Below are positions 24,415-27,400 of a stretch of DNA of 64,000 nucleotides, piece by piece. The position numbers and the translations under genes are program-made. This stretch comes from Magallana gigas. Taxonomy: Eukaryota. Below the pieces are notes generated by a model, which did no database searches, had not been told where the DNA came from, and was given only the letters and a program-made list of their open reading frames with translations. Each line of letters opens with the position of its first letter. Position 1 is the stretch's first letter. The stretch is from contig NC_088858.1 in assembly GCF_963853765.1 (NCBI RefSeq), positions 6,696,001 through 6,760,000 on the forward strand. Reading direction: 5' to 3'.

Positions 24415-27400
24415 TTACTCCGCCTGGTGGCGGATTGGGAACATCAACACCTTGGCCTGCATGAAGGACAGGTCAGGCAGTGACTTGATGATCCTGGCCG
24501 CCTCGGTGCCCAGTTTGTCCGTGTGTCTGTTCTTCTTCACTGTGCTAACCTTCATACTGGCTAGGATGTTCTCCAACGGCTGGAGGTTTGGTTTTTGTCC
24601 ATGCATTAACTCCGAATCAAATACTGCAATGTAGAGACAAGAATCATGTTATCAGAGAAGTATCATCATTACCCATGTGTTAGGTATTGTTGGGTTAACT
24701 CTACAAGATTTTGCCACCAGTGCCAAAAACTCTTGACAACAATAAAATGTATAATAATGTGCTATTGTTAATTATTTATCTTTGACATATGCTCATACTA
24801 GATGTCATACTATTATCACCATCATAGCTGAGCTCAAAAAATCTTTATACATTACAGATGTCAGATATTTACAAATTAGCAGCTGTAGAACAACTCTCTA
24901 AAAAAATATAATATAATGCAACAATAGTAAAACTGATCAAAAATTAGATTTGTGAAAGGAAATGCTCAGCATGGACAACCATATTAAAAGACTATTCAAT
25001 TCATGCTATTTAGTTGTTTCCATTCTTATTTCTTCAAGGATTTGTACTTGTAAAAAATAAAAGTTTGTCAAGCAAAGGTTGAGACATAAGTTCTTATTAA
25101 GGTGGTATAGGACACTTCCATGTTGTGACGTATTGTTTATCGAAATAAACAATAAAACCAAGTGTAATTATATAAGTAGTTTCTTTCCCAATATTGTCAC
25201 CTAACGGCATAGCGCAGTGGGTTAGAGGGTTTACTTCGAATCTGAAAGTCATGTTCGAATCCTGCTGGGAGTTTTACAATTTTTACTTCTCAAAATATTT
25301 TTTAAAACATTTTTTTGTTACATATTGTAGAATTTGAAAATTTTAAACCAGTGAGAGTATTTTAATTATAATGTACTTTAATGCACATAAATATCAACAG
25401 ATGTCCCATACCACCTTAATAAGATAACATGCAATACATCATTAGACAAACAAGCACATAGCATCGAGGTGGGGAAGTGGGGGGGGGGGGGGGGGGGGGG
25501 AGCATGTATAAAACTGAAATGAAGGAAATTAACAGCGAAAATAAAATCATTAGACTTGTAGATCCGCTCCTCTATGATACGCTTAGTGTTGCAATTGTAC
25601 GTGAGCGGATCTAAGTTCTAATTTTAATTAGATTGAAATTATAGGTACACTACGCTACTACCTTGCCCCCTTCCCCATTTGCTTATCAAGATTTTAAGAT
25701 TTTTTGGAAGGGTCTGCCATTCCCCCTTTCAAAAAAGATGCTACGTGCCTGTTAAGCACATTTAAAATGGAACCAAAAAAGTCCACCAGAGTGGATGTAC
25801 TGAGGAATCATTTAAGTTTGTTGGCCGGCAGCTCAGGCTTATTTTTGGGTATTTCCAGTTTTTTCCAGGTTTGTTGGGACGTAATTTTGTGGACCCATTC
25901 CCATGAATAATAAATAAAATAAAATTTTATCAGTTGTTGAGGATGTAAATTCATGGGCATTTTAGAGTCCCCTGGAAATCCATGAAAATTGAGCTACCAC
26001 AAATATTAATGATTCCTCAGTACTGATATCCCAGGAAATGTTAATATGTGTAAATAGTAAGGTTACATTATGTAACACATGCAAACATTTATATTCAAAC
26101 TCTTTTCACACTCTTTCTGATTTTATAGTTTTACTTCCTATATACAGTAATAAACCAGATTTACTTGTCTGCCCCATTTTCTCATATCCAATTACAAACA
26201 GATTTAATGAGAGGTCCATGGGCCACATCACTCACCTGAGTATATGTTTCTATTACCGGTAAGTTGTAACACCAGGTCAATTTTTTACCATAAAACTTTG
26301 AACTTTAGTTGTGACTACACCCTGGATCTACATATTTGTATATTCATTATTTTAATATAAGAAAGCATTTGTATGCCTATTATTAAAGTGGAATGCTACA
26401 CAATGAATTTTATCTGGATGGTTAAAGTATCATTTATGAAAAAGAGTTTTGTAGTTCAAAGAAGGATGTTTGCTCTTAAAATTATTTTATACAGTAACAG
26501 ATTTTTTAAAATATTTTTTTTGTACGAGCCCCAATATTGTTCTGGATTGCATTTTAAGTTTTAACAAACATATTTCTCTCTATCAGAATGTTTGCATTGC
26601 TAAAAAAAACCCAAAACAAATTAATATTGTGGACTACTCCCATGAAAACAATAAAAAATCTGTGTTATTTCCTTGTAGCCATAAACCTTAACAATCTACA
26701 GATGCCGACAAATTTTGATTATAAAAGCTCATTTTGGACTTCAGCTCTGGTGAGCTAAAAGTGTATAAGATGAGGGGAAAGACTGCTGGAATATTATTCA
26801 AGTGAAGAAAAAGATGCACTGTCTTTAACTCTTAAATAGGAGACAACTGCAATTATTATTTTGAACTTAAATGTATGATGTACATCAATTAATCCTCACA
26901 CTCACACCAGCAACACAGACACAAACAACAAAGAGTTACTAACATGGAGTGGAGCTTACCCCAATCCCACTCTACAATTAGCAGTGAATAGAAAAGAAAC
27001 AAAACTGTACAGCGGTCTTAACAAAGGTTCAGGAATGTTCTTTAGAAATATATAATTACCTCATCCAAACTTTATGAAATACATTGAATACTTTTATAAC
27101 TTCACCCCTTTACCTATTTTTAAGGAGGCTGGGTGTTCAACAAATTAACCATCAAATTCGCCTTACACGTTTTAATATGATATGTTTGGCCATCAAGTAT
27201 CATTTTGTAAAGCAAAAATCAAAACATTTTTGATTTAAAATATGAACATCTTTTTATATATTTTACAGAGCTCTTCATCTAAAGGAGGTAAATATAACCT
27301 AAAATGACCACAACCATCCAAAACAATTAGTGTTATCCTTTTTCATGTAGGAATAATAGGTAGCTCTTCTCTTTACAGAGTTATTATGAAATATATGGTA

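What the first reader, a model, noticed from the sequence alone, without database searches (positions are those of the whole stretch)
26960..26971. Hidden 12-nt microexon in aftiphilin adding EWDW just after the clathrin-box exon
A strong acceptor and a GTAAGC donor enclose exactly 12 nt between two phase-1 boundaries. Inclusion changes ..SLDLDF..GGRSG-VFDSE to ..GGRSG-EWDW-VFDSE. Trp/acidic motifs are the currency of clathrin and AP-ear binding, and 3-27-nt microexons in trafficking genes are typically neuron-specific in bilaterians (established). The inference is a neural switch in adaptor binding that gene predictors would miss.
Basis: partly seen in the sequence, partly recalled or inferred. 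Interest (0 to 1): 0.7.

Follow-up and report, generated by a model that had tools for sequence, protein, structure and literature searches.

The report
Conserved aftiphilin microexon in molluscs
The 12-base segment is a genuine, optional mini-exon of an oyster aftiphilin gene: other oysters, scallops, snails and octopus have the same insert at the same exon junction in their annotated isoforms. Whether it is nerve-specific, and what the added Trp-rich peptide binds, was not tested.

Summary
Observation confirmed. On the minus strand, 26971-26960 is a 12-nt AG/GT-bounded, phase-1 segment reading E-W-D-W. It lies between the 72-nt LDLDF exon (27642-27571) and the last coding exon (24623-24415).

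Shape alone is at chance level: 49 comparable segments in the intron against 56.6 in shuffles. The content is not chance. Seven +/- isoform pairs in seven mollusc species differ only by an insert at this junction:
- EWDW in Saccostrea echinata
- DEWDW in three scallops and two gastropods
- DDLDW in Octopus sinensis

A segment coding EWDW with both splice dinucleotides is expected about 5e-7 times in this intron.

So this is an old alternative microexon shared by three mollusc classes. It is already in RefSeq models elsewhere, so it is not generally invisible to predictors. I found no paper describing it.

The insert lies in a predicted disordered linker. It matches none of the canonical clathrin or AP-ear motifs tested. 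It matches only a generic LIR core, and not in octopus.

Neural regulation is plausible but untested. There is a UGC at -12..-10, a pyrimidine tract, and an eMIC-encoding Srrm234 exon in the genome.

Earlier notes of this scan reported other oyster microexons and the eMIC gene, not this one.

The parts
26960..26971 (-). 12-nt alternative microexon, phase 1 on both sides, adding E-W-D-W
   Evidence: Sequence read and phases. The pattern is unique in the window. The identical insert is present in Saccostrea echinata isoform X1 and absent from X2.
26972..27005 (-). 3' splice-site region of the microexon: pyrimidine-rich tract, UGC at -12..-10, CUAAU at -10..-6, tAG acceptor, nearest upstream AG about 33 nt away
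   Evidence: These features are compared with the eMIC-exon code described in 10.1101/2021.02.24.432780. This is suggestive only.
26954..26959 (-). 5' splice site GTAAGC of the microexon
27571..27642 (-). 72-nt upstream exon encoding (G)NNSKSLDLDFLVVQETESGGRSG, which holds the clathrin-box-like LDLDF; donor GTAAGC
   Evidence: It is 100% identical to P0002 residues 820-843.
24415..24623 (-). Last coding exon: (V)FDSELMHGQ...LPDLSFMQAKVLMFPIRHQAE, with stop TAA at 24417-24415
29043..29100 (-). 58-nt exon encoding DIPPVQFDWSSSGLTNPLQ (invariant FDW..SGL.NPL block)
29633..29770 (-). 138-nt exon (LIGHKKPSVPIY...EEPQKQ)
29893..30013 (-). 121-nt exon carrying most of the Pfam Clathrin_bdg (PF15045) match
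   Evidence: 32.3 bits, cut-off 22.5.
37609..37733 (-). 125-nt exon (VDELSDRTV...)
38008..40035 (-). Large first coding exon: acidic, disordered, with many DDFADF / DFGDF and WxxF motifs; ATG at 40035

Best explanation
26971-26960(-) is a cassette microexon of the oyster aftiphilin gene. It is orthologous to an alternative 12-15-nt microexon found in bivalves, gastropods and cephalopods.

Skipping joins ...GGRSG to VFDSE.... Inclusion inserts E-W-D-W. Together with the constitutive downstream residues this gives the conserved string [W/L]-D-W-V-F-[D/E/Q]-S-E-[L/I].

The insert sits in a disordered linker about 13 residues after the LDLDF clathrin-box-like motif and before the conserved C-terminal helices. 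The most likely mode of action is therefore that of a short linear motif: it adds or strengthens one weak, aromatic-acidic contact of aftiphilin with a partner, in the cells that include the exon.

Shown here: the anatomy, the orthology, alternative use in seven other species, and the disordered context.

Inferred, with my odds:
- Inclusion in this species: about 0.85.
- Enrichment in neurons through Srrm234/eMIC: about 0.45.
- Partner is clathrin terminal domain or an AP ear: about 0.3.
- Partner is Atg8/LC3 through a LIR-like W-x-x-V: about 0.2.
- Partner is something else or unknown: the rest.
For: - Seven isoform pairs in seven species differ only by EWDW, DEWDW or DDLDW at exactly this junction (accessions).
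- The exact coding pattern with both splice dinucleotides occurs once in 64 kb. None is expected in shuffles, and about 5e-7 is expected in the intron.
- The segment ranks first of 49 candidate segments on a crude splice score.
- The gene is confirmed as aftiphilin.
- In an AlphaFold2 model of Saccostrea echinata isoform X1 built on a 40-sequence alignment, the insert (residues 762-765) lies in coil with pLDDT below 50. It sits between the FDW..NPL block and helices 781-787 and 805-813.
- All 12 full-length Logan transcript products of two close relatives lack the insert. This fits a minor or tissue-restricted isoform.
- A UGC lies at -12..-10, with a pyrimidine tract and about 33 nt free of AG upstream. 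The published eMIC-exon code is long AG exclusion zones, UGC close to the 3' splice site and long pyrimidine tracts.
- The genome encodes an SRRM_C/eMIC exon, 32 bits against a cut-off of 27.
Against:
Conservation of the flanking intron and of the UGC is therefore unknown.
- The insert is not annotated in Ostrea edulis, S. cucullata, Ylistrum, Mytilus, heterodont clams, Solemya, a unionid, Elysia or Sepia. That could reflect loss or merely missing annotation.
- No canonical clathrin or AP-ear motif overlaps the insert. The LIR core fails in octopus, which has L in place of the first W.
- A UGC in a 25-nt stretch is common by chance, and two constitutive exons of this gene also have tGCag acceptors.
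Confidence: 0.85

Rival explanations
1. The microexon is real and conserved but is not a neuronal switch. It is included at a low or moderate level broadly, or in another tissue or developmental stage, independently of Srrm234.
For: No tissue data were obtained. The cis hints are weak, and UGC also sits at constitutive acceptors of the same gene. In scallops the insert combines freely with two other small cassettes in up to eight annotated isoforms, which looks like general combinatorial splicing of this region.
Against: Microexons of 3-27 nt in trafficking genes are predominantly neural in the animals studied (established). Assembled transcripts of close relatives all lack the insert. The regulator's eMIC exon is present in this genome.
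Confidence: 0.45
2. The sequence is a conserved relic that this species no longer splices. The exon is used in Saccostrea, scallops, snails and octopus but is silent here.
For: There is no RNA evidence here. Ostrea edulis and S. cucullata models lack the insert. The acceptor is only moderate.
Against: Both splice dinucleotides, the GTAAG donor core, the pyrimidine tract and all four codons are intact, and the peptide is identical to that of Saccostrea. That is unlikely for a 12-nt piece of a 2.9-kb AT-rich intron without selection.
Confidence: 0.1
3. It is a chance AG...GT decoy with no biological meaning.
For: Forty-nine such frame-preserving segments exist in the intron, no more than in shuffles.
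Against: The segment encodes exactly the peptide that is alternatively inserted at the same junction in orthologues. The expectation by chance is about 5e-7.
Confidence: 0.01

Closest known systems
Annotated alternative aftiphilin isoforms of other molluscs, e.g. Saccostrea echinata X1/X2 (XP_061165029.1 / XP_061165037.1), Pecten maximus X1/X2, Littorina saxatilis X1/X2, Octopus sinensis X1/X2
   Same: Same gene and same exon junction. Same phase (inferred). Same or near-same peptide: EWDW, DEWDW or DDLDW. Both forms are annotated.
   Different: Oysters have 12 nt (4 residues), the others 15 nt (5 residues). Octopus has L for the first W. For the window's own species I saw no annotated or assembled isoform with the insert.
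SRRM3/4- or Srrm234(eMIC)-dependent neural microexons of bilaterians
   Same: Size of 3-27 nt, frame-preserving, located in a vesicle-trafficking gene, in a disordered region next to an interaction motif. UGC close to the 3' splice site, a pyrimidine tract and an AG-free stretch upstream. The regulator's eMIC exon is present in the genome.
   Different: Neural enrichment and eMIC dependence are untested here. The microexon is mollusc-wide but was not seen in the annotated annelid, arthropod or fish aftiphilins examined.
Alternative clathrin-box cassette of aftiphilin (about 28 residues in fish; equivalents in a stick insect, the annelid Owenia, Octopus bimaculoides and scallops)
   Same: Alternative splicing remodels the same short stretch between the FDW..NPL block and the C-terminal helices.
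   Different: That cassette removes or adds the LLNLDF / LDLDF motif itself and is far more widespread. The microexon studied here is a separate, smaller exon one intron further downstream.
Trp-based endocytic motifs: W-box PWxxW (amphiphysin to clathrin terminal domain), WXX[FW]X[DE] (NECAP and others to the AP-2 alpha ear), DP[FW]. Definitions taken from PMC5694535.
   Same: An acidic context with two Trp and a Phe within five residues, in a disordered adaptor tail next to a clathrin-box-like motif.
   Different: The spacing is W-x-W-x-F and none of the patterns is matched. There is no Pro before the first W.
LIR / Atg8-interacting motif, [W/F/Y]-x-x-[L/I/V] with acidic flanks (definition from my own knowledge)
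   Same: In bivalves and gastropods, inclusion creates (D)E-W-D-W-V followed by F-D-S-E. This fits the core and the acidic context, and the Val comes from the junction codon.
   Different: In octopus the first aromatic residue is Leu, so the core is not conserved across all carriers. No binding data exist.

Membership tests
Aftiphilin (Pfam PF15045 Clathrin_bdg-containing AP-1 accessory protein) | Match to PF15045 above the curated cut-off | tested here: met
   Window exon 30012-29893 alone scores 32.3 bits against a cut-off of 22.5. Orthologues P0085, P0002 and P0121 also match.
Aftiphilin (Pfam PF15045 Clathrin_bdg-containing AP-1 accessory protein) | Collinear orthology with named aftiphilins over the whole coding region | tested here: met
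   tblastn of P0002 and P0085 against the window gives seven collinear exons. NCBI names the relatives aftiphilin-like.
Alternative cassette microexon (3-27 nt) | Length of 27 nt or less, AG/GT borders, frame kept on inclusion and on skipping | tested here: met
   12 nt, AG and GT, phase 1 on both sides.
Alternative cassette microexon (3-27 nt) | Both the included and the skipped forms exist as transcripts | tested here: inconclusive
   Met in seven other mollusc species, from annotated isoform pairs.
eMIC (Srrm234/SRRM3/4)-dependent neural microexon | Higher inclusion in neural tissue | not testable with these tools
eMIC (Srrm234/SRRM3/4)-dependent neural microexon | UGC close to the 3' splice site, a long pyrimidine tract and a long AG exclusion zone | tested here: inconclusive
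   UGC at -12..-10, pyrimidine-rich -33..-13, and nearest upstream AG at about -33. The code is as described. These features are common enough by chance, and their conservation could not be checked.
eMIC (Srrm234/SRRM3/4)-dependent neural microexon | The regulator with an eMIC domain is present in the genome | tested here: met
   PF15230 SRRM_C matches at G000:C3:24001487-24001618, 32 bits against a cut-off of 27. The peptide is shown.
eMIC (Srrm234/SRRM3/4)-dependent neural microexon | Inclusion falls when the regulator is removed | not testable with these tools
   This needs an experiment.
Clathrin terminal-domain ligands (clathrin box, W-box, arrestin box) | L-Phi-x-Phi-[DE], PWxxW or [LI][LI]GxL overlapping the insert | tested here: not met
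   A pattern scan of nine insert-bearing proteins found none overlapping the insert.
AP-2 / AP-1 appendage ligands | DP[FW], FxDxF, WXX[FW]X[DE], [DE]x1-2Fxx[FL]xxxR or Psi-G-[PDE]-[Psi/L/M] overlapping the insert | tested here: not met
   The last pattern is taken from my own knowledge of Mattera et al. 2004.
LIR / Atg8-interacting motif | Acidic residue, then [WFY]-x-x-[ILV] | tested here: inconclusive
   Met in the oyster, the three scallops and the three gastropod sequences. Not met in the two octopus sequences.

The most novel reading that the evidence does not exclude
A microexon shared by bivalves, gastropods and cephalopods, and so probably dating from early molluscs, is included in neurons under Srrm234/eMIC control. 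It installs a Trp-based linear motif ([W/L]-D-W-V-F-acidic) beside aftiphilin's clathrin-box-like motif. That would be a lineage-specific neural microexon with a defined interaction read-out outside vertebrates and flies.
Probability: 0.2. Interest if true: 0.6.

Novelty: new member of a known kind. Interest (0 to 1): 0.38.

Why it matters
Very few individual microexons have been followed outside vertebrates, flies and worms.

This one is tiny, old (shared by three mollusc classes) and sits beside a known interaction motif of an AP-1 accessory protein. The two isoforms differ by only 4-5 residues, so it makes a clean test case for two questions. Does the Srrm234/eMIC programme work in molluscs? 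How does a microexon re-tune a disordered adaptor tail?

For annotation, the practical point is that the exon is real and should appear in this genome's gene models.

It is not a new principle. The insert already stands in RefSeq models of related species.

Tried and rejected
I therefore had no genomic DNA of Saccostrea, Pecten or other molluscs, and could not align the intron flanks or the UGC.
- A word search with the last exon alone aimed at short transcript fragments spanning the junction. It returned only two ORF fragments that start at an internal Met.
- Paper searches for aftiphilin or AFTPH together with microexon(s) found nothing. A search for mollusc microexon work found nothing specific.
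- A scallop-type extra 30-nt cassette (GS[DE]HDIAAEI) was sought in the intron 29042-27643 and not found.
- The region is single-copy in the genome and is not a repeat.
- I considered a kinesin-light-chain W-acidic motif. Only the relaxed core [DE]-W-[DE] is present, and it is lost in octopus.
- The spliced model was never joined. Exons were searched one by one by reference, and database orthologues were used for whole-protein steps.
- The exhaustive representative search was not run. It carries no names and would not have resolved the taxonomic spread.

Full report
**What is in the sequence**

On the minus strand the window carries an aftiphilin gene. I mapped it with a 912-aa transcript product of a close relative (P0002) and with Saccostrea echinata aftiphilin (P0085). 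That gives seven collinear coding exons:

| Exon | Coordinates |
|---|---|
| 1 | 40035-38008 |
| 2 | 37733-37609 |
| 3 | 30013-29893 |
| 4 | 29770-29633 |
| 5 | 29100-29043 |
| 6 | 27642-27571 |
| 7 | 24623-24415 |

All have AG/GT borders and compatible phases. Exon 30012-29893 alone passes Pfam's threshold for PF15045, the aftiphilin 'Clathrin_bdg' family, at 32.3 bits against 22.5.

The 72-nt exon 27642-27571 encodes ...NNSKSLDLDFLVVQETESGGRSG and ends in phase 1. The last exon begins TA-TTT-GAT..., which reads (V)FDSELMHGQ....

In the 2947-nt intron between them...tattcactgctaattgtAG | AGTGGGATTGGG | GTAAGC lies at 26971-26960. With the carried-over G it reads E-W-D-W and restores the Val codon.

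**Is it more than chance?**

Architecture alone is not. The intron contains 49 stop-free, frame-preserving AG..GT segments of 3-27 nt, and shuffles give 56.6. The candidate does rank first on a crude pyrimidine-tract plus donor score. Even so, its acceptor is only moderate: tAG, with 70% pyrimidines.

The content settles the question. The pattern AG-ARTGGGAYTGGG-GT occurs once in 64 kb and in none of 100 shuffles. Its expectation in the intron is about 5e-7. That peptide is exactly what orthologues insert at this junction.

**Evidence from relatives**

A word search with the large exon already returned NCBI's aftiphilin-like protein of Saccostrea echinata, which reads ...GGRSG-EWDW-VFDSE.... 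A second search used that protein's C-terminal region. Three cluster look-ups followed.

Together they gave seven pairs of annotated isoforms that are identical except for the insert:

| Species | Insert |
|---|---|
| S. echinata X1/X2 | EWDW |
| Pecten maximus | DEWDW |
| Mizuhopecten yessoensis | DEWDW |
| Argopecten irradians | DEWDW |
| Littorina saxatilis | DEWDW |
| Babylonia areolata | DEWDW |
| Octopus sinensis | DDLDW |

O. vulgaris also carries DDLDW. One Logan transcript product, P0017, resembles the gastropod proteins and also carries DEWDW.

The conserved string is [W/L]-D-W followed by the constitutive V-F-[D/E/Q]-S-E-[L/I]. The exon is therefore shared by Bivalvia, Gastropoda and Cephalopoda.

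It is not annotated in Ostrea edulis, S. cucullata, Ylistrum, Mytilus, heterodont clams, Solemya, a unionid, Elysia or Sepia. Nor was it seen in the annelid, chelicerate, insect and fish aftiphilins examined. Absence from annotation is weak evidence of absence.

All 12 full-length transcript products of the two closest relatives lack the insert. That fits a minor or tissue-restricted isoform, because such assemblies drop rare variants.

**Where the insert lies in the protein**

I built an AlphaFold2 model of S. echinata X1 on a 40-sequence alignment. Overall confidence is low, as expected for a largely disordered protein (mean pLDDT 44).

The insert, residues 762-765, falls in coil with pLDDT below 50. 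It lies 14 residues after LDLDF (744-748). Before it comes the invariant FDW..SGL.NPL block, and after it come the short C-terminal helices 781-787 and 805-813.

The predicted helices upstream (587-664) overlap the Pfam domain. A published prediction and mutational study assigns this kind of region in human aftiphilin to HEATR5B binding (PMC10798858). The microexon is therefore outside that interface, in a linker where short linear motifs act.

**Which motif?**

I took the definitions from a review (PMC5694535) and scanned nine insert-bearing proteins.

None of these overlaps the insert: clathrin box, W-box, arrestin box, DP[FW], FxDxF, WXX[FW]X[DE], beta2-appendage helix motif, gamma-ear motif. 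The spacing here is W-x-W-x-F.

A generic LIR core does arise in bivalves and gastropods: an acidic residue, then W-x-x-V, with the Val supplied by the junction codon. It does not arise in octopus, where the first aromatic residue is Leu. A relaxed W-acidic core ([DE]-W-[DE]) shows the same distribution.

The partner is open, and membership in the named motif classes was tested and not met.

The oyster 'clathrin box' itself reads S-L-D-L-D-F. It fits the strict L-Phi-x-Phi-[DE] pattern only loosely.

**Regulation**

The eMIC-dependent exons of flies and mammals share long AG-free zones, UGC close to the 3' splice site and long pyrimidine tracts (10.1101/2021.02.24.432780).

Here there is a UGC at -12..-10, a pyrimidine-rich stretch from about -33 to -13, and no AG for about 33 nt upstream. 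These are hints only. Two constitutive acceptors of the same gene also read tGCag, and I could not test conservation of the flanks.

The genome does encode an SRRM_C/eMIC exon, at 32 bits against a cut-off of 27.

**Verdict**

About 0.85 for actual inclusion in this species.

The claim that predictors miss it is not generally true, since RefSeq models of seven species contain it. I found no paper that mentions it.

The neural switch and the clathrin/AP-ear reading are plausible but untested. I put neural enrichment at about 0.45. I file this as a new member of a known kind, an alternative microexon in a trafficking adaptor. Its modest extra interest comes from its age, its lineage restriction and its position beside an interaction motif.

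- The spliced model was never joined. Window exons were searched one by one by reference, and whole-protein steps used database orthologues.

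Noticed in passing
window 27571-27642 (-) and orthologues P0161, P0174, P0027/P0158, P0123, P0091: The exon carrying the clathrin-box-like motif is itself an annotated alternative cassette in very distant animals. Examples: cod and other fish (about 28 residues), the stick insect Bacillus rossius, the annelid Owenia, Octopus bimaculoides, and scallops (a 33-nt ANSKSLELDFL exon). Its length here, 72 nt, would keep the frame if skipped. This looks like an old bilaterian splicing switch of aftiphilin.
   Followed up: partly
scallop isoforms P0087, P0106, P0111; window intron 27643-29042: Scallops have a further optional 30-nt cassette (GS[DE]HDIAAEI) just before the clathrin-box exon. 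It combines with the other two cassettes into up to eight long isoforms. No counterpart was found in the oyster intron.
   Followed up: yes
P0008 (Ostrea edulis X2), P0086/P0088/P0090 (Pecten), P0131/P0127 (Octopus), P0137/P0189: Several molluscs have annotated or assembled isoforms whose C-terminus is replaced by a short out-of-frame tail. These isoforms lack the FDW..NPL block, the LDLDF motif and the C-terminal helices. I infer that the tail comes from skipping small exons in this region, such as the 58-nt exon. In the window, skipping 29100-29043 would likewise shift the frame.
   Followed up: no
window 30951-36355 (+): A Ty3/gypsy-type retrotransposon sits inside the 7.6-kb aftiphilin intron, on the opposite strand. 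It has an open 375-aa gag-like ORF and a 1359-aa pol ORF covering protease, reverse transcriptase and integrase.
   Followed up: no
window 40645-43305 (+): A gene for a CTLH plus WD40 protein lies head to head with aftiphilin, about 600 bp from its start codon. The first exon is unusually long, at 688 codons. By memory it resembles WDR91, but this was not checked.
   Followed up: no
window 18439-18861 (-): An ORF with a potassium-channel pore signature (TIGFGD) was seen in the ORF list. It was not examined.
   Followed up: no
P0001, P0003 (Logan): The commonest database products of the large first exon (140 and 22 member sequences) read through its donor into the intron. They probably come from genomic rather than spliced contigs. 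No spliced full-length product of the window's own species turned up in the word searches.
   Followed up: no
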